IMG/VR virus record: IMGVR_UViG_3300044644_001125
Coordinates: 62,001 to 126,000 of that record
Length of the DNA stretch: 64,000 bases
Strand: one strand, 5' to 3'
How positions within the stretch are numbered: position 1 is the first letter of the stretch; every line of letters starts with the position of its first letter. Positions 8,067 to 63,802 of the stretch are shown here, in pieces. The position numbers and the translations under genes are program-made. The notes under the pieces were generated by a model. It had not been told where the DNA came from, did no database searches, and saw nothing but the letters and a program-made list of their open reading frames with translations.

Positions 8067-8978
8067 ATGTGTATAGTCATAGCCAAACATTTTGAAACTC
8101 ACGGCTGGGTTGCTTTTAAGAACCGAGATCGTAATTACATCCCCGAAATTTCTTTTAAAAAGAAACTGGTTAAGGGAGTAGAAATCCTTTACTTCTGGGA
8201 TAATGTCACCGCTTACTGCGAAGGTATGAACTCTCACGGTATTGGTGTATTGAGTGCTAGTCTTATGGTATTAGATGACGAAAAGGAAATTGAAATCCGT
8301 ACTAGAACACCATCTAAAGACGGTGCTAAAATTAAGAAAGCACTTGAGTTAACAAATGTACACGACGTAGCAAAGGAACTTATCGAGTTGAAACTCACTG
8401 GTTCTACTATCATTTTCAACCAAGAGACCTGTTATCTTTTAGAGGGTGCTTGGGAGAAAGGTGGTTATAAAGCAGAGAAGTTCAGGTACGTCATTAAAGA
8501 GATTCCAAAAGACCAAACCGTGGTTAGAACTAATCACGGCGTCTGGTTACCAGATGCTGGTTATCAGCGAGGTGTTAATGAATCACAAACTAAAAGCAGA
8601 ATCTCAAGTGAATGCCGTAAACTTATTGCAGAGATCGTAACATTAACAGCTAAAACTCCAATAGAAATCTTAAATGGGTTAACTAAAGACTTTACCCATG
8701 ATGGTCAAATGAACGCATTGAGAACGTCAACTGAAGACAAAAAGATGCGTACCACTAGTCAGATTATGATTATCCCCAAAGAACAAACCATGTTTGTACG
8801 TCCAGTGCAAAGTAATATGGAGTTTAACTTCTGGGAATTGAACAGACCTGACCAACGCACTTGGGTAGAATTGTTGAGTAATCGTGTACTATACGATAAC
8901 CTAAAAGATAATGATCCAAATAACGACCCACCATTTGATTATGATTTAAAACATACATTATTAGGAAACGCAGAATGA
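8067..8978 (+). CDS. Ntn-hydrolase (N-terminal Cys) family protein
   Basis: MC start, KNRDR, EGMNSHGI, RTNHG motifs; CTAAATA upstream. Confidence 0.7.
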   Translation: MCIVIAKHFETHGWVAFKNRDRNYIPEISFKKKLVKGVEILYFWDNVTAYCEGMNSHGIGVLSASLMVLDDEKEIEIRTRTPSKDGAKIKKALELTNVHDVAKELIELKLTGSTIIFNQETCYLLEGAWEKGGYKAEKFRYVIKEIPKDQTVVRTNHGVWLPDAGYQRGVNESQTKSRISSECRKLIAEIVTLTAKTPIEILNGLTKDFTHDGQMNALRTSTEDKKMRTTSQIMIIPKEQTMFVRPVQSNMEFNFWELNRPDQRTWVELLSNRVLYDNLKDNDPNNDPPFDYDLKHTLLGNAE

Positions 8979-9340
8979 GAATCCATGAAATCCTAAGTGA
9001 AGCAAGCACACCACTGAGTAAAAATGCAAAAGCTAGTCTCAAAGGTGCTGTAACGACTCCAGCAGCGAATAACAATGGTGGTGATGCGTACAAGCATTAT
9101 CGCATGGGATTGGCATTAGCAGGAGCTCCTGAGTATCCCACAAAGGCTACAAATGATATCGCTGGTGATCCATTAATCAGTACGTATACTGATGAAGAAT
9201 TGGAGATGGTTAACTTTGCAGCTAAACAATCAAATGCAGGTAAAATAAAACGCATTACGAAAAATCGTAGTGAAGAAAGACCAGATACGGACAAGTTCAG
9301 TCCAGTGGCAAAAACAAAGAAGAATAAGTACGGTGTTTAA
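8975..9340 (+). CDS. Putative head internal protein
   Basis: MRIHEILSE N-terminus; late operon. Confidence 0.55.
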   Translation: MRIHEILSEASTPLSKNAKASLKGAVTTPAANNNGGDAYKHYRMGLALAGAPEYPTKATNDIAGDPLISTYTDEELEMVNFAAKQSNAGKIKRITKNRSEERPDTDKFSPVAKTKKNKYGV

Positions 9341-9342
9341 AG

Positions 9343-10029
9343 ATGAAAGATCCATTAATAGTAACAGTAAACAAAAACTTAAACCCAAAACTATGGGACC
9401 AAGACGGTAACTTACATCCAGTTATCAAAGATAAGTTAATCGATATTGCCGATGCTTTCTATGAGTTCATTGGTGTAAAATTGAACATCATCGATTTAAC
9501 TATCACTGGCTCTAATGCCAACTTCACCTGGAATGCCCATTCTGATATCGACTTACATCTTATCATCAGTGGCGTTGCGAGTGAACAAGATAGAGAACTC
9601 TTTAATGCCAAGAAAGCTGTTTGGGGTGATCAACATAATATTACAATCAAAGGCATCCCTGTCGAAGTTTATGTTCAAGGTAATGCAGAAGTTCATTACT
9701 CAACCGGTGTGTATTCTATATTAGAAGATGAATGGGTAGTTGAACCAATGAAACAAAAACCTGCAATTGATGATGCGGCAGTTCATGCCAAAAAAGATAA
9801 CATCGTAGAACGAATCGAAGAAGCTCTTATGGAAAACGACTTAGAAAAACTAAAGTCTATCAAAGAGAAAGTTGTACAGATGCGTAAGGCTGGATTAGAA
9901 AGAGCAGGCGAATGGTCAACTGAAAACTTAGTTTTCAAGATACTAAGAAATACAGGTATGATCGAAGAACTTACCACAAAGATTCACGAGTTAGTAGATA
10001 AAGAACTTAGTTTGGAGAATTTACAATGA
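9343..10029 (+). CDS. Pol-beta-family nucleotidyltransferase
   Basis: TGS-x10-DIDLH motif and downstream VEVYV. Confidence 0.8.
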   Translation: MKDPLIVTVNKNLNPKLWDQDGNLHPVIKDKLIDIADAFYEFIGVKLNIIDLTITGSNANFTWNAHSDIDLHLIISGVASEQDRELFNAKKAVWGDQHNITIKGIPVEVYVQGNAEVHYSTGVYSILEDEWVVEPMKQKPAIDDAAVHAKKDNIVERIEEALMENDLEKLKSIKEKVVQMRKAGLERAGEWSTENLVFKILRNTGMIEELTTKIHELVDKELSLENLQ

Positions 10030-11219
10030 GAATGAGTGATTTGCTACTAGAAGACGCAAAACCCAAATTAACTGAAAGAACCTTGGGTGGTTTTCCAGTT
10101 ACAAAATCATATGGTGCTATTCCAGATGCACCGGAAGATGACGTCGATGAAGCATTGAAAATTGGTGATGCAAGAACTAAAACCATCCCAACCGATGTAA
10201 TGCAAGGTAGACTTAATAGAATCCACAATAGAAACAAAACACTAACAGATAAAAAGAAACCAATCATTCATCGGAGTAACTTGGTTGCTACTAAAAGTGA
10301 TGACCCAAATGATAGATGGGATCTTAATGATCTAGCACAACAAATCATGACTAGACCTAGACAACTCATCAGTTCAAATGCTAAGATGAAATCGAGTATC
10401 ATTAAAGGTCAAGAAAAGTTATATGATATTACACTACCTGCACTTAGTGGTATTGTAGTTGATGAACAAACACATGAATTCGTAGAAGTGAATACATGTC
10501 CAGCTGCAGGTGTTTGTCAGAAGTATTGCTTTGCAAGAAAGGGTGGATATGTTCAATTCCCAGCTAGTAGTATGAATGCAGCTAAAACACTCAACTTCTT
10601 AGTTAATGATCCAGATGGCTATTTTGCTAGAATAGCAAGAGACTTAGCATCACTTGGTACTGGTAGAGTTACCAAGAAGCTACAGATTATTGTAAGATGG
10701 CATGATTCTGGTGACTTCTTCAGTATGGATTACTTCCAACGTGCAGTTGATTTAGCAAAACAATTTCCAAACATTGAATTCTATGCTTATACTAAATCAG
10801 CTAATGTAGCAACAAGTTCAGATACACCTGATAACTTCATCATCAACTTCAGTGATGGTGCAGCTAACAAATCTACTGAATTAGTTCAAAAACACATTGA
10901 TGCAGGTAACCACATCAAACACGCTAGGGTTATTCCAAAAGATGTTTTTGATGATCTAGTACTAAAAGATAATGAAGGTAAATTAGTTAAAGATAATCTA
11001 CACAGAACACAACTAAGATCACCAGCTGCTTGGGATATGCTAAAACAAAGATTGGCAAAAAGATTCAACGTTGATGTAGATACAATTATTTCCTATGATG
11101 AAATGCTCAAAATCCCAAAAGGTACAGAACCCAAATGGCGAGTAATTGTTCAAGCTGGTGCAGGTGACAGAGCAGCAAATCGCAGAGATGTTATCGATTC
11201 ATATCTTCTCATTCATTAA
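10026..11219 (+). CDS. Gp88-like Fe-S (radical-SAM-like) protein with capsid-targeting-like N-terminus
   Basis: TCPAAGVCQKYCFA, RWHDSGDF, FYAYTK; starts MRMSDLLLE. Confidence 0.7.
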   Translation: MRMSDLLLEDAKPKLTERTLGGFPVTKSYGAIPDAPEDDVDEALKIGDARTKTIPTDVMQGRLNRIHNRNKTLTDKKKPIIHRSNLVATKSDDPNDRWDLNDLAQQIMTRPRQLISSNAKMKSSIIKGQEKLYDITLPALSGIVVDEQTHEFVEVNTCPAAGVCQKYCFARKGGYVQFPASSMNAAKTLNFLVNDPDGYFARIARDLASLGTGRVTKKLQIIVRWHDSGDFFSMDYFQRAVDLAKQFPNIEFYAYTKSANVATSSDTPDNFIINFSDGAANKSTELVQKHIDAGNHIKHARVIPKDVFDDLVLKDNEGKLVKDNLHRTQLRSPAAWDMLKQRLAKRFNVDVDTIISYDEMLKIPKGTEPKWRVIVQAGAGDRAANRRDVIDSYLLIH

Positions 11220-11331
11220 TATGACAGACGAACAATTCAAGACCTTCCTGATAGTAGCAGTGGTTTGGTTCATGATATTATTTGGTCAAAAAGCAGTCTA
11301 GTATGCGCAGGACGGCAGTCCTGTGCAACAG

Positions 11332-11355
11332 TAGGGGAGACGAGTCTCCCTTTTA
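11332..11355 (+). terminator. Intrinsic terminator
   Basis: GGGAGAC-GA-GTCTCCC followed by T-run. Confidence 0.55.
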
Positions 11356-11447
11356 ATTTCCACTGTATTTTGTTCTTGTTTCACCACGCACACTAAAAGA
11401 TGAGCATCCAGCATGCTCCTACAACCGTATCTACCGTATAAAGCTAA

Positions 11448-12710: not shown

Positions 12711-12780
12711 TTATTGTAGGTTTATTGTAGAGTCGATTGTAGAGTCGATTGTAGAGTCGATTGTAGAGTCTATTGTAGGT
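12711..12780. repeat. Tandem 12-bp repeat (ATTGTAGAGTCG and variants)
   Basis: About 3 exact plus degenerate ATTGTAG units, read directly. Confidence 0.85.
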
Positions 12781-17904: not shown

Positions 17905-18327
17905 CTAAAGTAAATCGTGGATATGGTAGCAATTTTGGTAGAAGTAAGGTAGTTTAGTTTTACCTACTGATTCGTTTTCTACACGAAACTCGTAGAAGTA
18001 ATCGTCATAATCGTCTGTGTTAGATTCTTTAGTTGGTTCGTACTCCCAGAATGTCACGATGCCGCTACCAGATACGGTTAGGTAGTTTGCCCATGATGGT
18101 GCTGGTGAGTCGGTTATATCGGCTAGTGCTAGTGGCAATTCGATGACTGTTGGTTTGGTCACAGGTGTGAATGATTCGCCTAGATACGTTGAACTTGACA
18201 TACTGAACACGTCATCACTGATAATCCATGTTTCACCGTAGTGTGCATTGACTTGATTGTCTTTGATGCTAATGAATAACGCGCCAGTTGGGATTGTGCT
18301 TGTGTCGATTACTTCGTATGCTTTCAT
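17905..18327 (-). CDS. Early hypothetical protein
   Basis: Cassette promoter and SD. Confidence 0.7.
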   Translation of the reverse strand: MKAYEVIDTSTIPTGALFISIKDNQVNAHYGETWIISDDVFSMSSSTYLGESFTPVTKPTVIELPLALADITDSPAPSWANYLTVSGSGIVTFWEYEPTKESNTDDYDDYFYEFRVENESVGKTKLPYFYQNCYHIHDLL

Positions 18328-18987: not shown

Positions 18988-19599
18988 TTATCTTTTAGTT
19001 AGAATCAATCTAATGTCTTTCTTTTCTGGGGTATAAGCCCAAACTCGTTGGTCGAAGTCGTAGTCTTCTTCACCGTGGTGTAGTTTAACATTGGTTTCTA
19101 GTATGGTGTTAGTTGCAATGTCTACGATGTCTACTTGGTATTCTTCTAGGTTGCTAAACATTTTCCAAAGTTTTCTCGCGCCATAGTATTGTTCTTCGCC
19201 ACCCATTAGCGTATAACCTGCGTCAATTAGGCTCATATAGCTACCTGATGCAATGCCACGTCCATATTGGTTATCGACAACCTTGACTGCTTTAACGCTT
19301 AGTATGTTACTATAGTGTTCAAAGTTTGGCATTTTTTCAAGGCTAATTTCACCAGATACTTTAAACTTATCCTTTATAGTTTTGTAGTTCTTATCGATGT
19401 CTTCAGCAAAGAACCCGACAACAAACTCATAAGAGTTGTTTAGTTGATAGCGTTCCATTACGCTATCAGTCGTGTTTACAGTTCCAACAAAGGTATATTT
19501 GCTTTTCATTACACCCATTGTTATATCTGAATAGGCTAGTTGGGTATTCCATTCACCGTATCGTGCGATTGACATTTCTGTTAAGTCTTTTATTCTCAT
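18988..19599 (-). CDS. GNAT-like acetyltransferase
   Basis: VKVVDNQYGRGIA acetyl-CoA motif, ARKLW; N-terminus MRIKDLTE. Confidence 0.6.
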   Translation of the reverse strand: MRIKDLTEMSIARYGEWNTQLAYSDITMGVMKSKYTFVGTVNTTDSVMERYQLNNSYEFVVGFFAEDIDKNYKTIKDKFKVSGEISLEKMPNFEHYSNILSVKAVKVVDNQYGRGIASGSYMSLIDAGYTLMGGEEQYYGARKLWKMFSNLEEYQVDIVDIATNTILETNVKLHHGEEDYDFDQRVWAYTPEKKDIRLILTKR

Positions 19600-23788: not shown

Positions 23789-24679
23789 GTTTTGTTACTC
23801 CGTAGTGCTTTGTTAAGGTGGGTACAGTATAGTTGTTCTGTACCCAGTTGTCAACGATTATCTTTTAGGTTATAGTTCTAGTATGAGTTCGTTATTATCG
23901 TACTTAGACTTCCAAACCAGTTTTGCGGTGTACATATTAACGTCTAGTTCTGGTTCAAGCCATGTTAGTTCACTGTTTGACATATCGAATACATCGTCAA
24001 CTTCTTCCGATGCAAGGAAAGTTCCAGTGGGAATGATCGACCAATAAGTAACTTGGTTGATGTCATTACTTGATATAATCTCACGACCTTTCTCGATTTT
24101 TTCATTAAGAAAGTCTAAGTTGCCATAGTAAAACAACGGTGTGTCTGAGTATTCTTCGGTGGTTGAAAGTTCGTATAGTTTCATTGTAGTGCCTCGTTGT
24201 TGTTTAAAGTGGGTGTATTCTAAAAGATAACTGCTTTACTGTCAAGTGTTATATACTAATGGAATTGGTCTAATACCTAGTTGTTTTCTCATTAGAATCG
24301 CAATATCTTCTGTTTTTCTTACAAGCACTTTACCCTTTTTATTAAGAAGATTCGTTGATGCAACAATTCTGTTGTTGACTACATAAAACGTGTTTATTTT
24401 ATGCTCGGTGCGTGCATGAATATTGAATGCTATTATCTCGTACCCAGCATCTATTTTGTAAGCGTACACACTAGGTGGGCATACCAGTTCTTTTGTCAAA
24501 AGTCCAGTAGCAACTCTTTTATCTAGTATTGCTATAATTCTGCTTGATTCTTTCTTTAACCATCTTTGTTTAATTTTACCTTTTTTCATCTTGTTTACTC
24601 CGTAGTGCTTTGTTAAGGTGGGTATATTCTAAAAGATAACTGCCTCAAAGTCAACAGTTATCTTTTAGGTTAATCTAGG

Positions 24680-31658: not shown

Positions 31659-32162
31659 TTAGTGTCTTGTTGCTGGCTTGATACCAAAGATGGTATACAT
31701 CCGTTCATCAAACTTATCTAAGATAACGTCTGGTAGGATTTCCATAAGTTCATCTATGATTTCTGCCTTGAGTTGTTCAACATCAATCATTTCAACTTCG
31801 GTTTGTTTAGTTGTAAACTCGTTCTCTTGGCTTAATTGCAAGAGTACCGTTTCAAGGTTATGCAATGTTTTATCCTGTCGAGTGGCAACTTCCCAAAAAC
31901 CAATTCGATTATAGATAAAGATATAATCAGCATTAGTTTCATCTAAAAGATGATTGAGTGTCTTGTGTATCTCACTTTCATCTAGGTCACCAGTATCATC
32001 CGTTATTTCTGCTCTATCTCCTATCAACATCAATTTAGAGATGTTACTTTGGTCGATGTTAGCTAAAAGATAACGTCCAACATCTTTTAGAGTTCCTTCG
32101 TGGATATAGACGGATTCAACGACACCACCTTCTCTTACCCATGCAACTGTACTACTAGGCAT
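31659..32162 (-). CDS. Diverged paralog of 25992-26402
   Basis: SVYIHEGTLKDVGRYL, LMLIGD, DYIFIY pattern. Confidence 0.6.
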   Translation of the reverse strand: MPSSTVAWVREGGVVESVYIHEGTLKDVGRYLLANIDQSNISKLMLIGDRAEITDDTGDLDESEIHKTLNHLLDETNADYIFIYNRIGFWEVATRQDKTLHNLETVLLQLSQENEFTTKQTEVEMIDVEQLKAEIIDELMEILPDVILDKFDERMYTIFGIKPATRH

Positions 32163-33738
32163 TTTCTACCTCTCTTGCGATTATATCTGCTATTGTTTCG
32201 TCAGTGGCTTTATAGATAAGCCAGTTACCAATCTGTACCTTATGCTTTGCGTTCATGTACTTTAAACCAAAGTTACCCTCAAAGATTCGTTGTTTAGCGG
32301 CTGGGATGATGATAACATCCTCGCCAATGTACAAGTGGGTTCTGTCGGTATTATCAGTCAACAACGCCTTAAAGGTTGTTTCACTGGTATGGTTATCAAC
32401 GTACTGTTGGAACAAATCCGCCATTGGACTTGTTACTACTTCTTCAAACTTCATGTTATCGTTCCTTGTTAGCTCACCGCTAACGCGGTTCGCACGTTAA
32501 CGGTGAAGTTGTTAGTTAAGCTGGGTTAAGTATCTGTAATCCGTAGATTAAATCTTCGTCTGTAATCTCATCGTATGAGAGTATGTATTGTTCGCCATCA
32601 TCAACTGTATGTACATGAATCATCTTATCCTCTGGTGATAAGCCATCAATCACATAATCAACGTCATCTTTTACAATTAAGAATGCTTGTTCGATTAAGG
32701 TATTAAGTTGTTCTCTTGTTCTCATTGGTAGTGCCTCTTTGTTAGTGTAGTGGTATGGTATCAATTATCTTTTAGGTTGTCAACTTATTTCTTACTGTCC
32801 ATTAAGTCTTGCATACCGTCTAAGTGGTAGATTCGATTCTTATGGAATACAAACCCACCTATGTTTGTAAAGTAAATTTTGCAGTAGTTAGTTGCAATGT
32901 CTTTTTGGAAGTGGGTGAATACTGCAATACCCGCAATCAACGCGCCAATCGCAATACCACTAACAAATGCTCTTAATCCCCTAAAGTTATCTGATACTTC
33001 TACTAATCTTGGTTTCTGTTCGTAAGTTGCCATCTGTAGTGCCTCTTTGTTAAGTTGTGGCTATTCTAAAAGATAATCGAACTGCTGTCAACAACTTTCT
33101 GTAACAAGGTTCTCATGTCTTGGCATTCGCTGTCATCTTCTTCTGAAAACTCATAACCAAACGCAATAATATATTCTAAGGCAGTTTTAATCAAGTCTAC
33201 TTCATTTGCGTCAAAGTTCATGTTACTGTACTCTATAGTTATGTTTAAGGTCAATGTCTGGTGTCAATGGCATTGGTTTAGCTTTCGTATCAGTTCTTGG
33301 TAAGTGGATTTGTTTATGGTTAACGATAACATACTCTACCGTAAACTTATCTGGGCAAATCTGATACAAGGTTTCACCACTGCAATGTACATGGTCATAG
33401 AATCCTGTTTCATCTGGGAAGTCTGGTACATCAATAACCGCGTGTGCATTGGTGGTAAAAATGGCTAGTGCTAGTAGTAATTTCTTCATTGTCTTTTCTC
33501 GATTGTTGCTATTGTTCCAACTAAGTTTTGTGCAAATGTTGCTTTGAATTCTTGGTTATTCAGTGAAGTTGTTTTAACCCATTCATCGATAAAGTAACTT
33601 ACTGGTGTTAACTTTCTTACTTGGGACTTAGCCACTCCTGTATGGGTTGCTAAGGTTTGTTCTATTGTGGTCATGTCGCTATCCTCTGTTAAGTTGCAGG
33701 TATCTTACCCTAAAATACCTGCATTTGTCAACAACTCG

Positions 33739-49704: not shown

Positions 49705-50424
49705 TTAGCAGTTCCACTTTCTCAGTGCCAGTGCTTTTCTGGTTGGCTTGCCATGTTCATCCTTCATTGGTCCTTTCATACCACTCATTCTAGCACAGAA
49801 ACTTTTACGTCGTTTGGCTGCTTTGCTACCTGGTTTGAGTTTACTTGGTTTAGTAGTGACTGCTGTTTGAAGTTTACTTCCAGGGTGTTCTCTGCGATAG
49901 CTAGCTACACCTTTCTTGTTCAAACCACCTCGTTTGTTCTTGCCTTCTTTACGTTGCCAAGCAGCTGTTTCAAAGAGTTCACGATCACTGACTGATTCAA
50001 AGTCTTCCCAAATGACGTCACTATCAACGTTATGTTGTATGGCTAAACTTTCTACCATGTCTTCGATCATGTCGAACATCTCGTCAACAGTTGGGTTGAC
50101 TCCTTGGTCTTCTTGACTTTGTAGGTAATCCCAAACAGAAACCAGCATGCTTTCTGCTTTTGCGATTTTCTCTTGAGCCCATTCTGGTAGGTTTTCATTG
50201 TCGTCAATTGTATCGAGAAGCCCATCAACTGCTCTTCGAAGCGTATGAAGATTGCTGTGAGCCATCCCAGCTTCGTCATCATATTCTGCATTGAAGTTTT
50301 CGTTTGGTACACAGTTATTGACTCGGATACCACCTTTCATCTTAGTACCTTCTTTGTGTTTGCCCTTCCAACAACTTGGGTCTAGGCGTTGTTTTGATTC
50401 TGTAATTAGTTCACTGATGCGCAT
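49705..50424 (-). CDS. Modular putative head internal protein with DUF6321-like C-terminus
   Basis: MRISELITE start; AAWQRKEGK..GGLN..G...RKSFCARM...W.C; TAAATA upstream. Confidence 0.7.
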   Translation of the reverse strand: MRISELITESKQRLDPSCWKGKHKEGTKMKGGIRVNNCVPNENFNAEYDDEAGMAHSNLHTLRRAVDGLLDTIDDNENLPEWAQEKIAKAESMLVSVWDYLQSQEDQGVNPTVDEMFDMIEDMVESLAIQHNVDSDVIWEDFESVSDRELFETAAWQRKEGKNKRGGLNKKGVASYRREHPGSKLQTAVTTKPSKLKPGSKAAKRRKSFCARMSGMKGPMKDEHGKPTRKALALRKWNC

Positions 50425-50493
50425 TTTGGTAATCCTCTTAGTTTTGTGTATTTATTTGGTGCTGGTAAGTTAAATACATGTTTAAGGTGTATT

Positions 50494-51210
50494 ATGAGAA
50501 TCGAAGAAATACTAAGTGAAGTAAAACTAAAGCCACGCATATCAAATAAGTCTACAAGTGGCGTTTTGAAATCACCGAACTTACAGTTTATCGCAACTGG
50601 TACCCAAGCTATTGCGTATTATCACAAAACGCATCCGAATACTGTTGTTAAAGTTGCTGCGGTATCTGGTGAAGGAGACCCCATTTGGCAGTTCTTGCGT
50701 ATTTGCATCAATAATCAAAAGAATCCGTATTTTCCAAAAATCTTTAACTACAAGATATTCAATTTAAAATCGATAACCGATGAAGAAGAAGCGTACTTGG
50801 AAAACAATCCAGAGTTTGAATACTTACCTATTCATGATAATAGAAAGATGCAAATACTAATGGTAACTGAACGGCTTGATGAAATCACTGCACCTGAGTT
50901 TGAACAAGCATTGAGTAAACTAGGATTAGACAAATTGATCAACTATACTAAAAGAAAATGGCAACCTGGTTACAGCTATCCATTAACAACAGAACTAATA
51001 TGGAAAATGTTAATGGATAAAGAAGTTGGTAGACGGTATTTACGGTCTGAATCAACTGACAAGCACTTTTCGGATGCCATTAGGCTATTGAGTCCATTGA
51101 TAGCAACCGGTAGAATGTATGCTGATGTTCATCTTGGGAATATGATGTTGAGAAAAGATGGGCATTTGGTATTTAATGATCCACTAGCTATTACCCTTTC
51201 AGATGAATAG
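50494..51210 (+). CDS. Protein-kinase-like protein, putative internal protein
   Basis: GTQAIAY Gly-loop, VVK, MVTERL, DVHLGN, VFNDP; starts MRIEEILSE; TAAATA upstream. Confidence 0.7.
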   Translation: MRIEEILSEVKLKPRISNKSTSGVLKSPNLQFIATGTQAIAYYHKTHPNTVVKVAAVSGEGDPIWQFLRICINNQKNPYFPKIFNYKIFNLKSITDEEEAYLENNPEFEYLPIHDNRKMQILMVTERLDEITAPEFEQALSKLGLDKLINYTKRKWQPGYSYPLTTELIWKMLMDKEVGRRYLRSESTDKHFSDAIRLLSPLIATGRMYADVHLGNMMLRKDGHLVFNDPLAITLSDE

Positions 51211-51534: not shown

Positions 51535-52341
51535 TCAACTTAAACTTGATTGATAATCAGTAAGATGTTGGTAGATTGATTTCAAGTATCTGCGGTATAC
51601 TTTCTCGTAGCCTGGTTCTTGTCTATTCTTAAAATCAGAATAGGTAGTTGCTTGCTTTGGAATTTCTTTTAGGAATACAGTAATAGCAGTGGCTTGTTCA
51701 GCTACAGGTAACTTGTGTATCTTATTGATTAGATCCGATGCAGCTTCTTGTGCGTATGCTGCTATTTCATCAGGTTGAGATTTGTAGATTTCGTGTGCTC
51801 TTACTTTCTCTTCTTCTGATTTGAATTCATCTTGAATCAAGGCTGTAAAGAATTTGATTTTGTCTTTTTCAATATAGCCACGTTTGTATTTGTATCGTTG
51901 TCCGTGACTTACTTGCGTAGCATGAGTAACTTCATGCAGGAATACTGAAGTCAAGTAACCAATGATAGTATCTAGTTCAGTAGAAACGTCAATCTTTTCT
52001 GTCAACTGTTTATATAGCAGTGTGATAAGTTTTGAAAGTACTTTAGGTGAAATAGTTATCGTGTTGGTGTCTTCGAGGTACTGGCCGGTTCCATTGGGTA
52101 GGGATTTAAACTGAATAGTAACCTCACTGTTTGTTATTTGTTTTGCGTAATCTGTTAGAATAGGTTTGATCGCATTAACAAACGCAGTATTGTACTTGAC
52201 CATAAACTGCATATCCATTTTCGCTGGCGGTTGCGTTGGCGTTTTGAATATCGTTGCAACAGCGGTGTGTAATGCTCGGTTAATCGTTGGTGTGTAGTTT
52301 GATAACGATATACGTTCACTTAAGATTTCTGCGATTCTCAT
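51535..52341 (-). CDS. Zincin-like metallopeptidase, putative internal protein
   Basis: HEVTHATQ (HExxH) and downstream PDEIAAYA; starts MRIAEILSE. Confidence 0.7.
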   Translation of the reverse strand: MRIAEILSERISLSNYTPTINRALHTAVATIFKTPTQPPAKMDMQFMVKYNTAFVNAIKPILTDYAKQITNSEVTIQFKSLPNGTGQYLEDTNTITISPKVLSKLITLLYKQLTEKIDVSTELDTIIGYLTSVFLHEVTHATQVSHGQRYKYKRGYIEKDKIKFFTALIQDEFKSEEEKVRAHEIYKSQPDEIAAYAQEAASDLINKIHKLPVAEQATAITVFLKEIPKQATTYSDFKNRQEPGYEKVYRRYLKSIYQHLTDYQSSLS

Positions 52342-53150
52342 ACTGATGCCTTTCTTGTAAGGATGAAGCTATCACCGTAGGTTTCGATATTCCAAGTATT
52401 AGAAAAGAACTTGTTAAGGATTTTAGAATAGACTGCGAATCTACGATTTTGTCTAACGTGTACGCCTTCTGGTGAGTAACTAGTGATCACTGACATGAAT
52501 CGTTCTAGTTGTTTGAAGGCTTCGTTCATCTCTGGATATTTGCTGAGTTTCATGTCAGCAGCTTTGCGTATTTGCCAGTATAGTTTATCAAACTCACTTG
52601 AACTATATTTTTCAACTGGCTGGGTAAGATATTGTTTGATTGCCTCGATTGTTTCTAATACCAGGTTGTACTTATTCTTTCTAATCTCATCTTCTTCAGT
52701 TTTTAGTAACTCGTTTGTCACTGAACTTAAACCTTGCAATGATGCGAGTAATTCTCTTTTAGGTCTTTCTACTGGTATATTGAATTTGTGTTTGGTATCA
52801 CTAGGAGTTGAATGCGCAGAGAAAGTGCACCGGTCGATTTTGGCTTTGTCGAGATAGGTTTTAACGATGTAGCCAACCCCAGATAGAATATCAAAATCAT
52901 TATCAATATCTTTTCCTTCAGTCGATGCGGTATCATACATTGTACCATTAACATAGAAAACAACATCGGTTGTTTTCTCATCGCCATCGGTTGTTGTTTT
53001 GAATTGAATGTCTACTTGATTACCTTTGTTTGTGGTAAAAGTACGTTGTGCTATTTTGTTCTTAGAACCTTGCATACCGGCTTTTGATACAGTTGAACTT
53101 TTAACTGTAGTTAAAGGTTTCTTTGGTTCTAGTAGTTCGTGAATTCGCAT
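52338..53150 (-). CDS. Putative internal protein
   Basis: MRIHELLE start; ATAAATA upstream. Confidence 0.55.
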   Translation of the reverse strand: MRIHELLEPKKPLTTVKSSTVSKAGMQGSKNKIAQRTFTTNKGNQVDIQFKTTTDGDEKTTDVVFYVNGTMYDTASTEGKDIDNDFDILSGVGYIVKTYLDKAKIDRCTFSAHSTPSDTKHKFNIPVERPKRELLASLQGLSSVTNELLKTEEDEIRKNKYNLVLETIEAIKQYLTQPVEKYSSSEFDKLYWQIRKAADMKLSKYPEMNEAFKQLERFMSVITSYSPEGVHVRQNRRFAVYSKILNKFFSNTWNIETYGDSFILTRKASV

Positions 53151-53211
53151 TGGATAATGTCCTCTTTTGGTATTGAAGTATTTATGGAGGACATTATCTT
53201 TTAGGTTGTGG

Positions 53212-57256: not shown

Positions 57257-57588
57257 TGGTAGCCCTCGGTTGGTGGCTTACTAAACCTTAATAAGCCACC
57301 AGGTTATTAAAGGTTAGGTAATACCCAGTTGTTAATGATGAGTAATATCCCACCAAGAATCAACAATGGTCCTAAAACCAATCTTGTAACATAACCACAG
57401 ATTTCACTATCAACCACAGGTTCTTCTGATTGAACTTCTGGTTTGATACGATTTTTGTTTGATTCTTTTAAAGCCATGATTGTCTCCGTTTGTAATTTAG
57501 AAAGGGCTATTCTATCGAACAATCTATCGGTTGTCAACTACAAAACAGCACCTAAATATAACTAATCTTACCACAAAGGAAACCAAAC

Positions 57589-57813
57589 ATGAGAGCAGCA
57601 GAGTTTATGCGAACCCTGGCGGATTTAATCGACCAGCTAGAAAACAAAACCGATGATACTAAATCATCTGAATCAGAAACACCAATGGATTCTGGTGATA
57701 TAATGGTACCACCTCTACAGCAAAAGATCGAGTTGATGAAAAAGATGACAAACTCGGATGATGATAACTTTAATACAGCAGCGGCTGAAGAAGACGAACC
57801 ATTCGAAGGATAA
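57589..57813 (+). CDS. Small acidic late protein
   Basis: CTAAATA upstream, AAGGA SD, MRAAEF start. Confidence 0.65.
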   Translation: MRAAEFMRTLADLIDQLENKTDDTKSSESETPMDSGDIMVPPLQQKIELMKKMTNSDDDNFNTAAAEEDEPFEG

Positions 57814-57815
57814 CA

Positions 57816-59780: not shown

Positions 59781-59816
59781 GACTAAAAGATAATTGAAGT
59801 TAGTTTCGATTATCTT

Positions 59817-60149: not shown

Positions 60150-60178
60150 TGGATAAATATTAATAAAAGGAAAAGACA

Positions 60179-60436
60179 ATGTCACTAAACGGTATTTCAA
60201 CATTAGCAACTAGACAAGCTCGGCTTGAAGCTAAACTAAATTTGGCACAAGCAAAACGCCAAGGTAAAGTCGTAGCAGCTGATGGTACTATCACTGGTTC
60301 TATTGACCCAACCAAACCTTACTTTCGTGCGTTGAATGTATATGATGTAAATCTTTTACCAACTAAGTATAGTGGCAACACTTTGGTTCAAAACAGTCAT
60401 CCATTGTTGTTAAGTTTACATCACCCATGGGTATAG
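60179..60436 (+). CDS. Small late (possibly structural) protein
   Basis: ATAAATA and AAGGA upstream. Confidence 0.6.
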   Translation: MSLNGISTLATRQARLEAKLNLAQAKRQGKVVAADGTITGSIDPTKPYFRALNVYDVNLLPTKYSGNTLVQNSHPLLLSLHHPWV

Positions 60437-60454
60437 CCTCGCAATATCAATATA

Positions 60455-60982
60455 TTAGACATTCCTAACCGGAATAGTAACCCTGTTACTATCTAAATCC
60501 TCGAAGTCATATTCATCATCTTCGAATCCATAAGTGGTAACAGGCCCATCACTTGGCATTTCATAGGGACGAGAACCATACACGTGATTCTCCTCGTCGT
60601 AGAATGGTTCAGTAGATGTATACACCCAGTTTTCTTGTTTCAATGCTGTTAGTAAATTGGGTTCTGCTTGTTTACGAATAATCTCGCATTCATAAACAGT
60701 TGGTAATCGCCATCCAATCTTACCATCGATATTCAAAGAAAAGCAATACAACTTTGCATGCTCAAAAAGAAAGTCTTGACTCCAATAATCCCTCGGTGAA
60801 ATCTCAAGTTTAGCATAATCCAACTCGTCAGCTTTGTTATGTAACGCAATAGCAAATTCACGTGCAGTTGCTGTATCAACCTCACCAACTGATGCCCAAC
60901 TAATGGTAGATGGATTTACTGTTTCAAAATCAACAGAAGATATGTACGGTTCAGAAACCGTTATCAATTTTTTAACGTTCAT
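60455..60982 (-). CDS. DUF1566-like protein with N-terminal extension
   Basis: LEISP..YCFSLNIDGKIGWRLPT...IPVRN. Confidence 0.75.
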   Translation of the reverse strand: MNVKKLITVSEPYISSVDFETVNPSTISWASVGEVDTATAREFAIALHNKADELDYAKLEISPRDYWSQDFLFEHAKLYCFSLNIDGKIGWRLPTVYECEIIRKQAEPNLLTALKQENWVYTSTEPFYDEENHVYGSRPYEMPSDGPVTTYGFEDDEYDFEDLDSNRVTIPVRNV

Positions 60983-61332
60983 CGGATTGCTTCTAAGGTA
61001 ACTGAGGTTTCAGTAACAGACCAAACATGGACTGGTTTCTTTTTTGATTTAGCATATTCAATTGATTCTGATGTACTGTCAGATACTGAATCGCAAATGG
61101 CAATCAACATATCGGCTGAATCAATGATAGCATGATTTCTTTCTGGTGAATAATGTTCTGCAAATACTTGCGGTGGTCTTCTTAGATTCTTGTAAGCATA
61201 CATAACGGCATTACCATCAACACCAGATGAATGTGAAGTACTGATCTCATCCAACTGACTATAATCTTTTAGGATACGTTCGATGGTAGGATAACTAACG
61301 ATTGTGCGTGAACCAATTACTGCTGCTTTCAT
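60979..61332 (-). CDS. SLOG (YspA/DUF2493-like) protein
   Basis: AVIGSR, GVD, RN..IID.AD.LIA, ST..SIEYA....KPV. Confidence 0.7.
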   Translation of the reverse strand: MKAAVIGSRTIVSYPTIERILKDYSQLDEISTSHSSGVDGNAVMYAYKNLRRPPQVFAEHYSPERNHAIIDSADMLIAICDSVSDSTSESIEYAKSKKKPVHVWSVTETSVTLEAIR

Positions 61333-61374
61333 GTGAACACCTCTCTGTTAAAAGTTGGTAGTGTATACTGGTAT

Positions 61375-61904
61375 TTAAGGATTGTCAATAGTTCTTACTG
61401 CTCTGACTGACAAGTTCTGATCAACCAAGTAATCGTCATCAGATGACCAATACCAAGCCCAGTGCGAAGATTCGGAATTTTTAGAAAGTTCTTTAAGCTC
61501 GTCACTTGTTGGTAATCTCCAACCTATCTTACCATCAACACTAAGAGAAAAGCAATACAATTTTGCAGCATCTAATGAATTAGTGAATGTTTCGGTTTCG
61601 ATTGGTGACAACTCAATCATAGCGTTCTGACTGGTCTAGCCTGCGAAAGCATTGTGGGTAAGTGCTCTATTGTAGTGACTCCACCGTATTGGATATGGAA
61701 GATGCAACCATGATTGTTGTCTTTTGCATTGATCCAGCATGAGCCTGGAACTTCAATATCCATTCGTCCTAGTTCTTGCATTTCAGATATAGTAGGTAAA
61801 CGCCATCCAGTTTTACCGTCGATGTTTAATGAAAAACAATATACAATTGCTTCATCAATAGTTAAGGTCTTTTCGTATTCAGGTGGTGATAATTCAAAGT
61901 GCAT
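61375..61904 (-). CDS. Two tandem mini DUF1566-like genes (61617-61904, 61375-61620)
   Basis: YCFSL..DGK.GWRLPT...VRT. Confidence 0.8.
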
Positions 61905-62136
61905 ATAGTGCCCAATGTAACATTCAATTAAACTATAGGATATTAAATATCGCGAGGCACGTTAGTGCCGAGCCATTACTAATATCCGGGAGTGTGTTAA
62001 TATTATGGTTATGATTGCGAGGCACGTTAGTGCCGAGCTAATCTCTCTTTTTCTGTTATAAGGATAAATAAGTGTAGTCCACGGATTTGGCGATCCTGAC
62101 TACTTTAGAACTATTAACTTTAGAGGAGTTCCAACT

Positions 62137-63444
62137 ATGACTATTTATGCCAAAATTTTAGCAACAAAAGAACACAACGAACGTCAACTAAGAATCTACG
62201 TAAAATACATCGCAAAATGTGCAGTATTAAACGAGAATCTTTCAGAAGATACCTACACAGAGCTTCATCATATCTGCCCTAGAGTATTCTTTCCTGAATA
62301 CAAAAATCTAAAAGATCATCCTTGGAATGGGATACGATTAACACTAGGCCAACACTTCACAGCCCATTTGATTCTTTCAAACGCATATACGTTTAACGGT
62401 GCTATGTCTCAAGCATTTTACCTTATGTGCACACAGAATGGAAGTAAAGGTCAAGCAGTTGTTGATAGGTTCAAAAACTTGAAAACCTACTACGAAGATG
62501 CTCGTAACCTAGTCATCAACTCTCAACGCGGTTTAACTATGGTTAAAAACAAAGAAACCGGTGTGTTTGGTCTGATTCCGGTAGAAGAGTACACTGCAAA
62601 TCCTGATTTATACGAAACTGCCACTACTGGCATGGTAACAGTTCGCGATATTGAAACCGGTGAAATAATGAGTATGTCATGCGAAATTTACCACGCGAAT
62701 AAGGACAAGTTTACTGCCATGAATACTGGAATCGTGCACGTCACAGACAAATTGACTGGTGAGAAGAAACGCATACCATCAGAAGAATATCAAGCAAATA
62801 AAGAAAGCTACACAACTTCTGGGTCTGGAGTGACTACTGTTAGAGAATTAGCAACTGGTATTGTAATGAGTGTACCCGTCGATGAGTACTCAAACAATAA
62901 AGATCGATTCGAAAGCATTGTTACTGGAACTACAACTGCAAGATTAATAAGCACCGGTGAGATGGTTGTTATCCCAGTAGAAACATACCATGCAAATCGT
63001 GATTTATACGAAACTGCTACTACTGGTCTATTGACTGCAAAAAACAAATTAACAGGTGAATCTGTTAGATTGACCAGAGAGGAATATGAGGCAAATAAGG
63101 ATTTGTATCACTTCCACACATCTGGAGTGTCAGTTATATCGACTATTACCGGTAAGAAATCGCGCATATCATGGGATGAATTTGAAAACAATCCTACCTT
63201 GTATTATAGAGTAAGCAATGTACGGTCAATATACGAACTAGGGAGTTACTCAAAACCAATAGATTATGTAAAACTACCACACGAAGTCAGTAATAAGTCC
63301 AGTTGGGTTCATAACCCAACCACTGGTGAATGTAAAAAGATATCAAAACACGAATACGTTGAATTAGATTGGTTAGCTGGTATCACACCAGAATATAAAA
63401 AACAATTAGAACGTGAACGTTACCATGCTAACAAAGTAAAGTAA
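62137..63444 (+). CDS. HNH homing endonuclease with repeated C-terminal DNA-binding modules
   Basis: YTELHHICPR...N.I.LT..QHF.AH..L; about seven 33-aa repeats (G..TV....TGE.....EEY..N.D.Y). Confidence 0.85.
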   Translation: MTIYAKILATKEHNERQLRIYVKYIAKCAVLNENLSEDTYTELHHICPRVFFPEYKNLKDHPWNGIRLTLGQHFTAHLILSNAYTFNGAMSQAFYLMCTQNGSKGQAVVDRFKNLKTYYEDARNLVINSQRGLTMVKNKETGVFGLIPVEEYTANPDLYETATTGMVTVRDIETGEIMSMSCEIYHANKDKFTAMNTGIVHVTDKLTGEKKRIPSEEYQANKESYTTSGSGVTTVRELATGIVMSVPVDEYSNNKDRFESIVTGTTTARLISTGEMVVIPVETYHANRDLYETATTGLLTAKNKLTGESVRLTREEYEANKDLYHFHTSGVSVISTITGKKSRISWDEFENNPTLYYRVSNVRSIYELGSYSKPIDYVKLPHEVSNKSSWVHNPTTGECKKISKHEYVELDWLAGITPEYKKQLERERYHANKVK

Positions 63445-63451
63445 TTATCTT

Positions 63452-63802
63452 TTAGTACCCTGTCGTGTTGGAATCATTGCGTGGTTCCTGCACTTCAGGT
63501 TTTTGATGGAACTTCTTTCTATCAGGTTTTTCCGGTTGAAACTTTTGAAATTTACCAGAAGTTGATCTTACTGGTGGCGAAATTTTAAATTTTCCATCTC
63601 TTTGATCCGCTGCATTCTTTGCACAAGATTTAGAAAATGAAGGATGACCATTATTTGAAATGCAGTTGGATGGGTCCGTTATTTTGTGTTTTTTGGACCA
63701 GTCAAATCCACTTTTCGACCCGGAACAGTCTTTCGTGCACGGTAATCCGTTGTATGATAACCCTGAATAGGTCAACTCTGTTATAATTTCATGTATTCTC
63801 AT
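63452..63802 (-). CDS. Putative internal protein
   Basis: MRIHEIITE start, CTKDCSG motif, ATAAATA upstream. Confidence 0.6.
   Translation of the reverse strand: MRIHEIITELTYSGLSYNGLPCTKDCSGSKSGFDWSKKHKITDPSNCISNNGHPSFSKSCAKNAADQRDGKFKISPPVRSTSGKFQKFQPEKPDRKKFHQKPEVQEPRNDSNTTGY

What the first reader, a model, noticed from the sequence alone, without database searches (positions are those of the whole stretch)
8975..63802. Shared N-terminal tag MRIx(E/D)(I/L)xxE on eight unrelated proteins: a packaged effector arsenal
Seen: MRIHEILSE (8975), MRMSDLLLE (10026), MRIKDLTE (19599), MRISELITE (50424), MRIEEILSE (50494), MRIAEILSE (52341), MRIHELLE (53150), MRIHEIITE (63802). Most follow a TAAATA late promoter. 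Established: T4 internal proteins carry a roughly 10-aa capsid-targeting sequence removed by gp21 after (I/L)xE. Inference: this tag loads a kinase-like protein, a GNAT, a zincin, an Fe-S protein and others into the head for injection. The GNAT gene is an exception, sitting in the early array with no visible late promoter.
Basis: partly seen in the sequence, partly recalled or inferred. Interest (0 to 1): 0.7.

Follow-up and report, generated by a model that had tools for sequence, protein, structure and literature searches.

The report
Capsid-loading tag on jumbo-phage proteins
A giant phage puts the same 8-9-residue label (M-R-I-x-E-I/L-x-x-E) on the front of many unrelated enzymes; it is most likely a variant of phage T4's capsid-targeting leader, which loads proteins into the head and is then cut off, so the packaged (probably injected) proteins could be predicted from sequence alone.

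Summary
All eight N-termini are at the stated coordinates. Genome-wide (327-kb jumbo phage, related to Pseudomonas phage PA5oct) 13 proteins carry the strict tag against 0.04-0.13 expected, and 26 carry a looser form. The proteins are unrelated beyond the tag, and the tag's codons vary synonymously.

The capsid-targeting reading is well supported, but only indirectly:
- The genome has a T4 gp21-type prohead protease.
- Its scaffold-like protein holds 19 (I/L)xE sites against 3.9 expected.
- TAAATA boxes are enriched upstream of tagged genes (p=1.6e-5).
- In PA5oct, 7 of 10 tag-bearing proteins are virion proteins by published mass spectrometry, against a 21% background.
- The "GNAT" exception belongs to a family of 807 clusters whose leaders differ by lineage. 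They include MKTFKEFIAE, one residue from the T4 IPII/IPIII CTS. Of 89 members, 77 have Glu just before the conserved core.
- T4 gp24's cleaved propeptide, MAKINELLRE, fits the tag consensus with a one-residue offset.

No data exist for this phage itself. Packaging, cleavage and injection are inferred. It is a new variant of a known kind.

The parts
8975..9340 (+). Tagged gene, 121 aa, MRIHEILSE|A. No family hit. Basic, low-complexity mature part.
10026..11219 (+). Tagged gene, 397 aa, MRMSDLLLE|D. GP88 domain (PF17338, E=2e-33) with an invariant Cx5Cx3C.
   Evidence: Orthologues in other phages carry other leaders (MKIRTIVE, MRAHEF, MDIRNILKLITE, MNDIRNILDILTE).
18988..19599 (-). Tagged gene, 203 aa, MRIKDLTE|MSIA. 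Member of a large family (807 clusters) of leader-bearing phage proteins. The GNAT assignment is a weak lead only. It lies in the early-type small-gene array.
49705..50424 (-). Tagged gene, 239 aa, MRISELITE|S. C-terminal DUF6321 (PF19846, E=3e-22).
50494..51210 (+). Tagged gene, 238 aa, MRIEEILSE|V. Protein-kinase-like, of the T7 gp0.7 type.
   Evidence: phrog_15752, E=1.6e-7. Faint PF27024 hit on an orthologue. The AF2 model's Foldseek hits are all kinase or APH folds. The tag is conserved in 13 orthologues and E9 is invariant.
51535..52341 (-). Tagged gene, 268 aa, MRIAEILSE|R. Zincin-like (HEVTH motif). Its start overlaps the stop of gene 52338-53150.
   Evidence: DUF6782 and DUF4344, both weak; SprT-like and LPD leads.
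52338..53150 (-). Tagged gene, 270 aa, MRIHELLE|P. No family assigned.
63452..63802 (-). Tagged gene, 116 aa, MRIHEIITE|L. Cys-containing small protein. A TAAATAC box lies 11 nt before the ATG and no SD is visible.
57589..57813 (+). Loose-tag gene, 74 aa, MRAAEFMRTLADLIDQLE. Acidic small protein.
17905..18327 (-). Loose-tag gene (MKAYEVID) in the early-type array. Could be a chance match of the loose motif.
23870..24184 (-). Loose-tag gene (MKLYELSTTEE) in the early-type array. Uncertain member.
32155..32454 (-). Loose-tag gene (MKFEEVVTSP) in the early-type array. Uncertain member.
8056..8061 (+). TAAATA late-promoter-like box heading the operon 8067-11219, which holds tagged genes 8975 and 10026.
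50449..50454 (-). TAAATA box 30 nt upstream of gene 50424(-).
50471..50476 (+). TAAATA(C) box 23 nt upstream of gene 50494(+). With the previous box it forms a divergent pair in a 69-bp spacer.
53179..53184 (-). TAAATA(C) box 34 nt upstream of gene 53150(-). It serves the two-gene operon 53150 and 52341.
57553..57558 (+). TAAATA box 36 nt upstream of gene 57589(+).
63808..63813 (-). TAAATA(C) box 11 nt upstream of gene 63802(-).

Best explanation
The tag M-[RK]-[IL]-x-E-[ILF]-[IL]-x-E is a short N-terminal propeptide. [quoted passage not shown]

Proposed sequence of events:
1. Tagged proteins are made mostly late.
2. The amphipathic leader gives them affinity for the scaffolding core of the assembling prohead, so they are built into it.
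3. The phage's gp21-type serine protease then cuts after the Glu of the (I/L)-x-E that ends the tag, at the same time as it cuts the scaffold and the major capsid protein.
4. The mature enzymes are left free inside the DNA-filled head and most likely leave with the DNA at infection.

The cargo includes a T7-0.7-like kinase, a zincin-like protein, a GP88-domain protein and a DUF6321 protein. Elsewhere in the genome it includes an ADP-ribosyltransferase-like protein and a protein with a ParB-type DGHHR motif that matches a PHROG annotated 'ParB C-terminal domain'.

Shown here: the tag, its statistics, the protease gene, the site-rich scaffold, the promoter association, the link between tag and virion in a relative, and the interchange of this tag with T4-type leaders on orthologous cargo.

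Inferred: binding to the core, cleavage at that Glu, and ejection into the host.
For: (1) The tag is real and acts at the peptide level. There are 13 strict matches against 0.04-0.13 expected, on proteins unrelated beyond the tag, with synonymous codon variation.

(2) The machinery is present. There is a Peptidase_S77 / phrog_207 prohead protease (82.7 bits). It is followed by a scaffold-position protein with 19 [IL]xE sites against 3.9 expected (p=3e-8, the top protein in the genome), which is comparable to T4 gp22 with 16 sites in 269 aa. The major capsid protein has a predicted cut at QLSE|SATAG, in a stretch conserved in PA5oct.

(3) TAAATA lies within 70 nt upstream of 14 of 26 tagged genes against 71 of 457 others (p=1.6e-5).

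(4) In PA5oct (capsid protein 66% identical), the tag sits at 10 gene starts. Seven of these are ESI-MS/MS virion proteins, against 93 of 445 overall (p=0.001). Among ORFs of 125 aa or less, the figures are 4 of 7 against 9 of 236 (p=1.6e-4) (PMC7318152).

(5) The tag is clade-wide. A 137-kb relative has 16 tagged genes, 11 of them in one cluster. More distant relatives tag an SLT/PG-binding protein, an amidoligase and the kinase, behind TATAAATA boxes.

(6) Cargo orthology. In the family of the 19599 gene, 77 of 89 members have Glu at P1, directly before the conserved core, and 77 of 89 have L, I, V or M at P3. The leaders are lineage-specific. They include MKTFKEFIAE, MLSFKEFVLE and MKTFREW...LTE (T4 type) as well as MRIKDLTE, MKAKELLTE and MRLKELLQKINE (this type). 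Members with T4-type leaders lie in T4-like head modules, or in operons of 8-9 genes with similar leaders.

(7) T4 comparators, read from NC_000866: IPII/IPIII MKTYQEFIAE, IPI MKTFKEF...ITE and gp24 MAKINELLRE. Their roles follow PMC9026906 and PMC5694885.

(8) In the AF2 model of the kinase-like protein the tag is a short helix (residues 3-9) followed by a low-confidence linker.
Against: - There are no proteomic, N-terminal or injection data for this phage, which is an uncultivated IMG/VR genome.
- The PA5oct virion list contains some obvious non-structural contaminants, and no peptide-level data were available to show that the leader is removed.
- About a third of loose-tag proteins lack a second Phi-x-E at positions 7-14. 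They may be targeted without cleavage, cut at E5, or be false members.
- Four loose or strict tags, including the 19599 gene, lie in an early-type sigma70-promoter array with no TAAATA box. That fits late prohead loading poorly unless the proteins persist.
- The AI complex test of protease plus tag gave no verdict.
- Gene calls here are crude (ATG starts only).
Confidence: 0.78

Rival explanations
1. The leader is only a protease-removable pro-sequence. It keeps potentially harmful enzymes inactive until head maturation, or marks structural head proteins as in T4 gp24. It is not itself the address that brings them into the prohead, and the proteins are structural or internal-body components rather than injected effectors.
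For: T4 gp24, a structural vertex protein, carries a propeptide that fits the tag consensus. The small head-module protein g326727 and its homologue PA5oct EST35_0150 also carry the tag. Several tagged proteins have no enzyme-like features.
Against: In T4, the first 10 residues alone suffice to target foreign proteins (PMC9026906). Many cargo proteins here look like enzymes: kinase-like, ART-like, zincin-like. A leader of 8-9 residues followed by a disordered linker is unlikely to inhibit varied folds.
Confidence: 0.1
2. The tag is an N-terminal degradation or recognition signal. One candidate is the phage- or host-encoded Clp/FtsH proteases that this clade carries. Another is some other cellular destination. 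In this reading it has nothing to do with the capsid.
For: PA5oct encodes ClpX, ClpP, ClpA, ClpS and FtsH homologues, and this genome has a ClpP homologue. 'Met-basic-hydrophobic' resembles one published class of ClpX N-terminal motifs; this comes from my own memory and was not checked.
Against: This reading does not explain the conserved Glu, the Phi-x-E immediately before conserved cores across 77 of 89 family members, the interchange with canonical T4 leaders, the enrichment in PA5oct virions, or the late-promoter link.
Confidence: 0.04
3. The shared start is an mRNA or translation-initiation feature: A-rich, unstructured first codons of highly expressed late genes. It would not be a peptide signal.
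For: The codons used (AGA, ATA, GAA, AAA) are A-rich. Many of the genes sit behind late-promoter-like boxes.
Against: Synonymous codons vary freely while the residue classes are kept, for example AGA, CGC and CGA for Arg, and six codons for the hydrophobic residue at position 6. The residue pattern is kept in relatives of 53-97% identity. Internal occurrences of the peptide are about 300 times rarer than at N-termini.
Confidence: 0.03
4. The shared N-termini are chance matches, or remnants of recent duplication of a 5' gene segment.
For: None beyond the a-priori possibility.
Against: There are 13 observed against 0.13 or fewer expected. There is no DNA-level identity or protein similarity beyond the tag. 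The same tag is found in independent genomes.
Confidence: 0.01

Closest known systems
T4 capsid-targeting sequence (CTS) of internal proteins IPI, IPII and IPIII (Mullaney & Black 1996; reviewed in PMC9026906)
   Same: - A leader of 10-19 residues on otherwise unrelated proteins.
- It ends in (L/I)xE, which the gp21 protease cuts.
- The cargo is hypervariable and the leader conserved.
- The genes lie behind T4-type late promoters.
- The same cargo family carries either leader type.
   Different: - The consensus is M-[RK]-I-x-E-[IL]-[IL]-x-E rather than M-K-T-[YF]-[QK]-E-F-I-A-E. It is one residue shorter before the Glu-hydrophobic pair.
- The host clade is a 327-kb jumbo phage related to PA5oct.
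- The repertoire is larger: 13 strict and up to 26 loose members, against three IPs plus Alt in T4.
- Nothing has been shown experimentally for this tag.
T4 gp24 vertex-protein propeptide MAKINELLRE (cleaved by gp21)
   Same: It fits the tag consensus K-I-x-E-L-L-x-E residue for residue after a one-residue offset. It is a 10-residue propeptide removed at L-R-E (PMC5694885).
   Different: It sits on one structural protein, not on a family of unrelated enzymes. There is an extra Ala after the Met.
T4 Alt, a packaged and injected ADP-ribosyltransferase processed by gp21
   Same: It is an enzyme loaded into the head, processed by gp21 and delivered with the DNA. This genome has a tagged protein, MRISEFVTE (196 aa), whose nearest Atlas clusters are ART-PolyVal and AcrIF11-type ADP-ribosyltransferases.
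   Different: No sequence relation to Alt was shown. The ART assignment is a language-model lead plus a sub-threshold DUF3990 hit.
Propeptides of phiKZ, 201phi2-1 and SPN3US head and ejection proteins, cut by the gp175/gp245 protease
   Same: These are jumbo phages with many head-internal proteins processed after Glu by a protease of the T4 gp21 lineage (PMC5694885).
   Different: The cleavage motif there is S/A/G-x-E or A-x-E. The propeptides are mostly longer than 100 residues, and no common short leader exists. Here the motif is (I/L)-x-E and the leader is a shared 8-9-mer.
Polyvalent proteins of phages and conjugative elements (Iyer, Burroughs & Aravind 2017; from memory)
   Same: The domain repertoire proposed there to enter the host with the DNA overlaps with the leads for the cargo here: ART-PolyVal, zincin / LPD-type domains and ParB-like.
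   Different: In polyvalent proteins the domains are fused into one giant polypeptide. Here each domain is a separate gene with its own address tag.

Membership tests
T4-type capsid-targeting leader system | Short (about 10-19 aa) N-terminal leader shared by otherwise unrelated proteins | tested here: met
   There are 13 strict and 26 loose members, with no similarity beyond the first 12 residues.
T4-type capsid-targeting leader system | Leader ends in the gp21 cleavage motif (L/I)-x-E | tested here: met
   All 8 window tags and all 13 strict tags end Phi-x-E at residue 8 or 9. Across three genomes, 31 of 46 loose-tag proteins have such a site at positions 7-14, against 127 of 708 untagged (p=2e-12).
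T4-type capsid-targeting leader system | Genome encodes a gp21-type (Peptidase_S77) prohead protease and a cleavable scaffold core | tested here: met
   PF03420 at 82.7 bits and phrog_207 at E=9e-56. The scaffold-position protein has 19 [IL]xE against 3.9 expected.
T4-type capsid-targeting leader system | Late expression from T4-type late promoters (TATAAATA) | tested here: inconclusive
   TAAATA boxes are enriched upstream (p=1.6e-5), and 7 of the 8 window genes are covered directly or through an operon. No transcript data exist. The 19599 gene lies in an early-type array.
T4-type capsid-targeting leader system | Tagged proteins are present in purified virions | not testable with these tools
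   Not testable for this uncultivated phage. In the relative PA5oct, 7 of 10 tag-bearing proteins are ESI-MS/MS virion proteins.
T4-type capsid-targeting leader system | Leader is removed in the mature virion (semi-tryptic N-terminus after Glu) | not testable with these tools
   The peptide-level PA5oct data are not held. Indirect support: the Glu is invariant directly before conserved cores (A2; 77 of 89 members).
T4-type capsid-targeting leader system | Leader alone suffices to package a foreign protein | not testable with these tools
   This needs a tag-reporter fusion in a cultured relative.
T4-type capsid-targeting leader system | Sequence match to the T4 IP leader MKTYQEFIAE | tested here: inconclusive
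   The pattern is the same (Met, basic..., Glu, hydrophobic, hydrophobic, x, Glu) but the spacing and residues differ. The fit to the T4 gp24 propeptide MAKINELLRE is closer. Both types are found on one orthologous cargo family.
T7 gp0.7-like protein kinase (gene 50494-51210) | Profile match and kinase fold with catalytic-loop and Mg-binding motifs | tested here: inconclusive
   - phrog_15752 at E=1.6e-7, and a faint PF27024 hit on an orthologue.
- The Foldseek top 50 are all kinase or APH folds, but TM is only about 0.33 on a model with pLDDT 69.
- Invariant VVKVAA, DVHxxN and FNDP motifs.
- No Pfam hit above threshold.
GNAT acetyltransferase (gene 18988-19599) | Profile match to Acetyltransf families or a GNAT fold | tested here: not met
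   No Pfam hit for any of 18 family members. No PDB profile hit. The only support is Atlas neighbours at ranks 14 and 36 that carry Acetyltransf_1, plus a GxGIA-like motif.

The most novel reading that the evidence does not exclude
The tag is one dialect of a modular 'address label' system used across the whole T4 superfamily. Each lineage has its own leader, matched to its prohead core. Cargo genes move between lineages and swap leaders. Jumbo phages of the PA5oct-related clade use the M[RK]IxE[IL][IL]xE dialect to pack an unusually large set of enzymes that act on the host at the moment of DNA entry: at least 13, possibly more than 20, including kinases, an ADP-ribosyltransferase-like protein, a protein with a ParB-type motif, a zincin-like protein and an amidoligase. 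If so, the injected proteome of uncultivated phages can be read from genomes with a simple N-terminal rule.
Probability: 0.5. Interest if true: 0.72.

Novelty: new variant of a known kind. Interest (0 to 1): 0.62.

Why it matters
Proteins that a phage packs into its head and injects are its first weapons against host defences. T4 IPI*, which blocks a restriction enzyme, and T4 Alt are examples. Such proteins are hard to find because they are hypervariable and mostly unannotated.

A short, recognisable leader would turn their discovery into a sequence search. For this jumbo-phage clade it flags a dozen or more candidates per genome, several with enzyme-like folds. It also shows that whole protein families of unknown function, such as the 807-cluster family of the 19599 gene, are probably capsid cargo.

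The leader could also serve as a packaging tag for engineering cultured relatives such as PA5oct, as the T4 CTS already does for T4.

Tried and rejected
- Megablast of 8 kb of the window against GenBank phages found no match.
- tblastn of the kinase-like protein against GenBank phages, and a viral-contig scan with it, found nothing. Its relatives came only from the large protein collection.
- tblastn of the GP88 protein found only distant domain matches in Streptomyces and Synechococcus phages, without the leader region.
- The single-sequence AF2 model of the kinase-like protein was unusable (pLDDT 45), so it was redone with an alignment.
- Complex prediction of the prohead protease with the first 30 residues of the kinase-like protein gave no verdict (score 0.00). 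This is not evidence either way.
- A search for the protease on five related fragment contigs, meant to test co-variation of tag and head module, found none. Those contigs are 9-44% complete.
- The PA5oct supplementary peptide tables are not held, so removal of the leader could not be checked.
- Pfam on 18 members of the 'GNAT' family, and a profile search against PDB sequences, gave nothing.
- Cluster look-up of members with T4-type leaders returned no informative names.
- A scan for a second, T4-type leader class in this genome found none convincing.

Full report
**What the window is.** The window is bases 62,001-126,000 of a single 327,256-bp contig with 38% G+C. It is an uncultivated IMG/VR virus record estimated to be 92% complete. 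Its replicative helicase is about 50% identical to those of Pseudomonas phage PA5oct and Agrobacterium phage Atu_ph07. Its major capsid protein is 66% identical to that of PA5oct. It is therefore a jumbo myovirus of the distant T4-related group around PA5oct.

**Check of the observation.** All eight N-termini are present exactly as written. Each is the first ATG of its ORF.

I called genes crudely (ATG starts, greedy longest ORFs, 483 genes). The strict pattern MR[ILMV]x[ED][ILVM]x(0-3)E is found at 13 gene starts. The same peptide without the Met occurs only 8 times in 97,672 internal residues, which gives 0.04 expected at 483 starts. Column shuffles of residues 2-13 give a mean of 0.13 and a maximum of 3. 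A looser form, M[RK]-Phi-x-[ED]-Phi, is found at 26 starts against 0.8-2.5 expected.

After the first 12 residues are removed, the tagged proteins show no mutual BLASTP similarity, apart from a short motif shared by two small acidic proteins. The codons behind the tag vary synonymously. Arg is AGA 10 times, CGA twice and CGC once. Ile is ATA, ATC or ATT. Six different codons are used at hydrophobic position 6. The shared feature is thus a peptide under selection. It is not a repeated DNA segment, a duplication or chance.

Pooling 56 tagged starts from this genome, two related contigs and PA5oct gives the consensus M-[RK]-[IL]-x-E-[ILF]-[IL]-[TSE]-E.

**The promoter statement.** TAAATA (mostly TAAATAC) lies within 70 nt upstream of 14 of 26 tagged genes and of 71 of 457 others (Fisher p=1.6e-5).

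In the window, four genes have their own box: 50424, 50494, 53150 and 63802. The boxes of 50424 and 50494 form a divergent pair inside a 69-bp spacer. Gene 52341 overlaps the end of gene 53150. Genes 8975 and 10026 lie in an operon that starts behind a TAAATA box at 8056.

The 19599 gene has no TAAATA within 1.6 kb upstream. It sits among 65 minus-strand small genes, none of which has one. Most of those genes have TTGACA...TAnAAT-type promoters and a conserved leader.

**The machinery a T4-type leader would need.**
- The genome encodes a Peptidase_S77 prohead protease (PF03420 at 82.7 bits; phrog_207 at E=9e-56).
- Directly after it comes a 362-aa protein in the position of T4 gp22, and then the major capsid protein (phrog_138).
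- That scaffold-position protein has 19 [IL]xE motifs where 3.9 are expected (Poisson p=3e-8). It is the most enriched protein in the genome. T4 gp22, which gp21 chops at such sites, has 16 in 269 residues.
- The capsid protein has ...QLSE|SATAGATSAG..., and PA5oct has ...FLVE|NASAGATQAG... at the same place. This resembles the T4 gp23 arrangement ...LTE|AEIGG.
- A small protein homologous to PA5oct EST35_0150, which in PA5oct lies just after the portal gene like T4 gp67, also begins with the tag: MKLLEF here and MKINDIITE in PA5oct.

**Experimental evidence from a relative.** The GenBank record of PA5oct marks the 93 proteins found in purified particles by ESI-MS/MS (PMC7318152). Allowing GTG starts, the loose tag occurs at 10 annotated or near-annotated gene starts.

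Seven of these are virion proteins:
- EST35_0150, MKINDIITE
- EST35_0175, (V)KILEM
- EST35_0205, MKLFEV
- EST35_0230, MRLDEI
- EST35_0238, (V)KIKDILVE
- EST35_0380, (V)RLNEINLIE
- EST35_0381, MKILEFNLTE

Against the background of 93 in 445, this gives p=0.001. Small proteins are rarely detected by this method. Among ORFs of 125 aa or less, 4 of 7 tagged ones were detected against 9 of 236 untagged (p=1.6e-4).

There are two caveats. The list includes a few clear contaminants, such as ribonucleotide reductase. No peptide-level data were available to show whether the leader is missing from the mature proteins. Only the small head protein is conserved between the two phages; the other tagged cargo is lineage-specific. 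T4-related phages show the same pattern with their internal proteins (PMC9026906).

**Spread of the tag.**
- Orthologues of the GP88-domain protein in IMG/VR contigs (37-53% identity) begin MKIRTIVE or MRAHEF. In a more distant group they begin MDFRKILNIITE, MDIRNILKLITE or MNDIRNILDILTE. All have a Phi-x-E within the first 8-14 residues.
- A 137-kb fragment of a related phage has 16 tagged genes among 186. Eleven lie in one cluster, and they include proteins of 653-1569 aa.
- The kinase-like protein has orthologues at 53-97% identity on contigs of up to 372 kb. All begin M[KR]IxE[LI][LI]xE, with Glu-9 invariant.
- In two of those genomes the tag is also on an SLT/PG-binding protein (MRFIEFKPLIE), an amidoligase (MRYTEFKPLLNE) and others. 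The kinase and amidoligase genes lie behind full TATAAATA boxes.

**The strongest comparative evidence comes from the 'exception'.** The 19599 protein has homologues whose leaders differ but always end Phi-x-E directly before a conserved M/Q-S/A-I-A-x-x-G-D-W core. Glu-8 is one of four invariant columns in the N-terminal alignment.

A profile search of 1.8 billion representatives found 807 clusters. Of 89 full-length members with a recognisable core and a leader, 77 have Glu at P1 and 77 have L, I, V or M at P3. Leader length ranges from 5 to 27 residues.

The leaders fall into dialects:
- T4 type: MKTFKEFIAE, MLSFKEFVLE, MKPFKQFLDE and the long MKTFREWMESEDDALTE.
- The present type: MRIKDLTE, MKAKELLTE, MRLKELLQKINE and MKLKELFRENNLLE.

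MKTFKEFIAE differs from the T4 IPII/IPIII leader MKTYQEFIAE at two positions. That member lies next to the Peptidase_S77 gene in a T4-like head module with Portal_T4, T4_CASP and Gp23. Eight or more neighbouring genes there, including a SprT-like zincin, begin MK[TS]F/Y..[FY][IL].E. Another member (MLSFKEFVLE) lies in an operon of at least nine genes that all begin ML[ST]FKE[YF].LE. In Campylobacter T4-like phages the homologue begins MMKFSDFLEE|QAIA.

One orthologous cargo thus wears the canonical T4 label in T4-like phages and the M[RK]I label in this clade, with the cut site kept in register. The 10-residue T4 gp24 propeptide, MAKINELLRE, also fits the present consensus exactly after a one-residue offset (its cleavage is stated in PMC5694885).

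**What the cargo is.**

In the window:
- 50494 is kinase-like. The evidence is phrog_15752 (T7 0.7-type) at E=1.6e-7, a faint PF27024 hit on an orthologue, an alignment-based AF2 model (pLDDT 69) whose top 50 PDB matches are all protein-kinase or aminoglycoside-phosphotransferase folds at low TM (about 0.33), and invariant VVKVAA, DVHxxN and FNDP motifs.
- 52341 has an HEVTH motif and weak zincin hits.
- 10026 has a GP88 domain with an invariant Cx5Cx3C. This is compatible with a metal or Fe-S site but does not prove one.
- 50424 has a C-terminal DUF6321.
- 19599 is not demonstrably a GNAT.

Outside the window the strict or loose tag is also on:
- a second kinase-like protein by sequence motifs (VLKV and a DxxxxN...IDxG pattern);
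- a protein with a DGHHR motif that matches phrog_2579, which is annotated 'ParB C-terminal domain';
- a 196-aa protein whose nearest Atlas clusters are ART-PolyVal and AcrIF11-type ADP-ribosyltransferases (score 0.96). This recalls T4 Alt.

These assignments are leads of unequal strength. Together they fit a set of host-directed enzymes better than a set of structural proteins.

**Mechanism proposed, and what is inferred.**
- Shown: the tag and its statistics, the protease and the site-rich scaffold, the promoter association, the association between tag and virion in PA5oct, and the interchange with T4 leaders on orthologous cargo.
- Inferred from the T4 model (PMC9026906, PMC3012670): the leader binds the prohead core, the protease cuts after the terminal Glu, and the freed proteins leave with the DNA.
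- An alternative that keeps the cleavage but drops targeting or injection cannot be excluded for some members, because T4 gp24 is structural.
- The degron, mRNA-feature and chance explanations fit the data poorly (see the rival explanations).

**Novelty.** The T4 CTS has been known since 1996, and 'CTS-like' leaders in close T-even relatives are mentioned in the review. Four literature searches found no description of this leader in PA5oct-type or other non-phiKZ jumbo phages. The PA5oct paper does not mention propeptides or N-terminal motifs.

I rate the finding a new variant of a known kind. The mechanism is familiar, but three things appear new: a distinct consensus in a different clade, an unusually large repertoire, and direct comparative evidence that leaders are swapped on shared cargo.

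Noticed in passing
Whole genome; in the window e.g. 12785, 12817, 18397, 19654, 42512, 42547, 63827(-): The 10-mer TATCTTTTAG (usually ATTATCTTTTAG) occurs 172 times on both strands against about 2 expected. Of these, 119 lie in the 10% of the genome that is intergenic. It often sits directly before a -10-like TAGAAT/TATAAT or a TAAATAC box, and sometimes forms tandem clusters. It may be a phage-specific promoter upstream element or a binding site for a phage factor.
   Followed up: partly
window 13000-40500, minus strand: This is an array of about 65 small genes. Most are preceded by a repeated spacer with TTGACA, about 17 nt, then TAnAAT/TAAACT, and then a conserved leader CCACCTTAACAAAGCACTACGGAGTAAAC before the ATG. 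None has a TAAATA box. It looks like a sigma70-type early gene array with a shared 5' UTR.
   Followed up: partly
genome 250984-251232 (outside the window; window-relative 188984): An 82-aa tagged protein, MRLHELFEE|ASAGATSAGDIAAV..., would after the predicted cut begin with nearly the same sequence as the predicted mature N-terminus of the major capsid protein (SATAGATSAGNVAT). It may mimic or partner the capsid N-arm.
   Followed up: no
window 63803-63813: Gene 63802(-) has its TAAATAC box only 11 nt before the ATG and no Shine-Dalgarno sequence. The box at 8056 is also 11 nt before the ATG at 8067. These may give leaderless or near-leaderless late mRNAs.
   Followed up: no
window 10026-11219 and loci L004-L013, L046: The GP88 (PF17338) family has three invariant cysteines in a TCPxxGxCxxxC(Y/F)AxKG motif (Cx5Cx3C), plus conserved histidines. 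This suggests a metal or Fe-S site in a domain of unknown function.
   Followed up: partly
window 57589-57813 and genome 169893-170342: Two small acidic loose-tag proteins share the motif PPLQQ(K/Q)IE(L/I), the only similarity found among tagged proteins beyond the tag.
   Followed up: no
L050 (JGI 3300010935, T4-like contig) and L048 (Logan SRR14556255): Uncultivated T4-like phages carry runs of 8-9 or more consecutive genes with T4-type leaders. In L050 these lie inside the head module, between the portal and scaffold genes, next to a 585-aa Peptidase_S77 protein that is much longer than T4 gp21.
   Followed up: partly
window 8067-8978: The first gene of the operon that holds two tagged genes encodes a 303-aa protein beginning MCIVIAK. 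A Cys at position 2 recalls N-terminal-nucleophile hydrolases; this was not tested.
   Followed up: no
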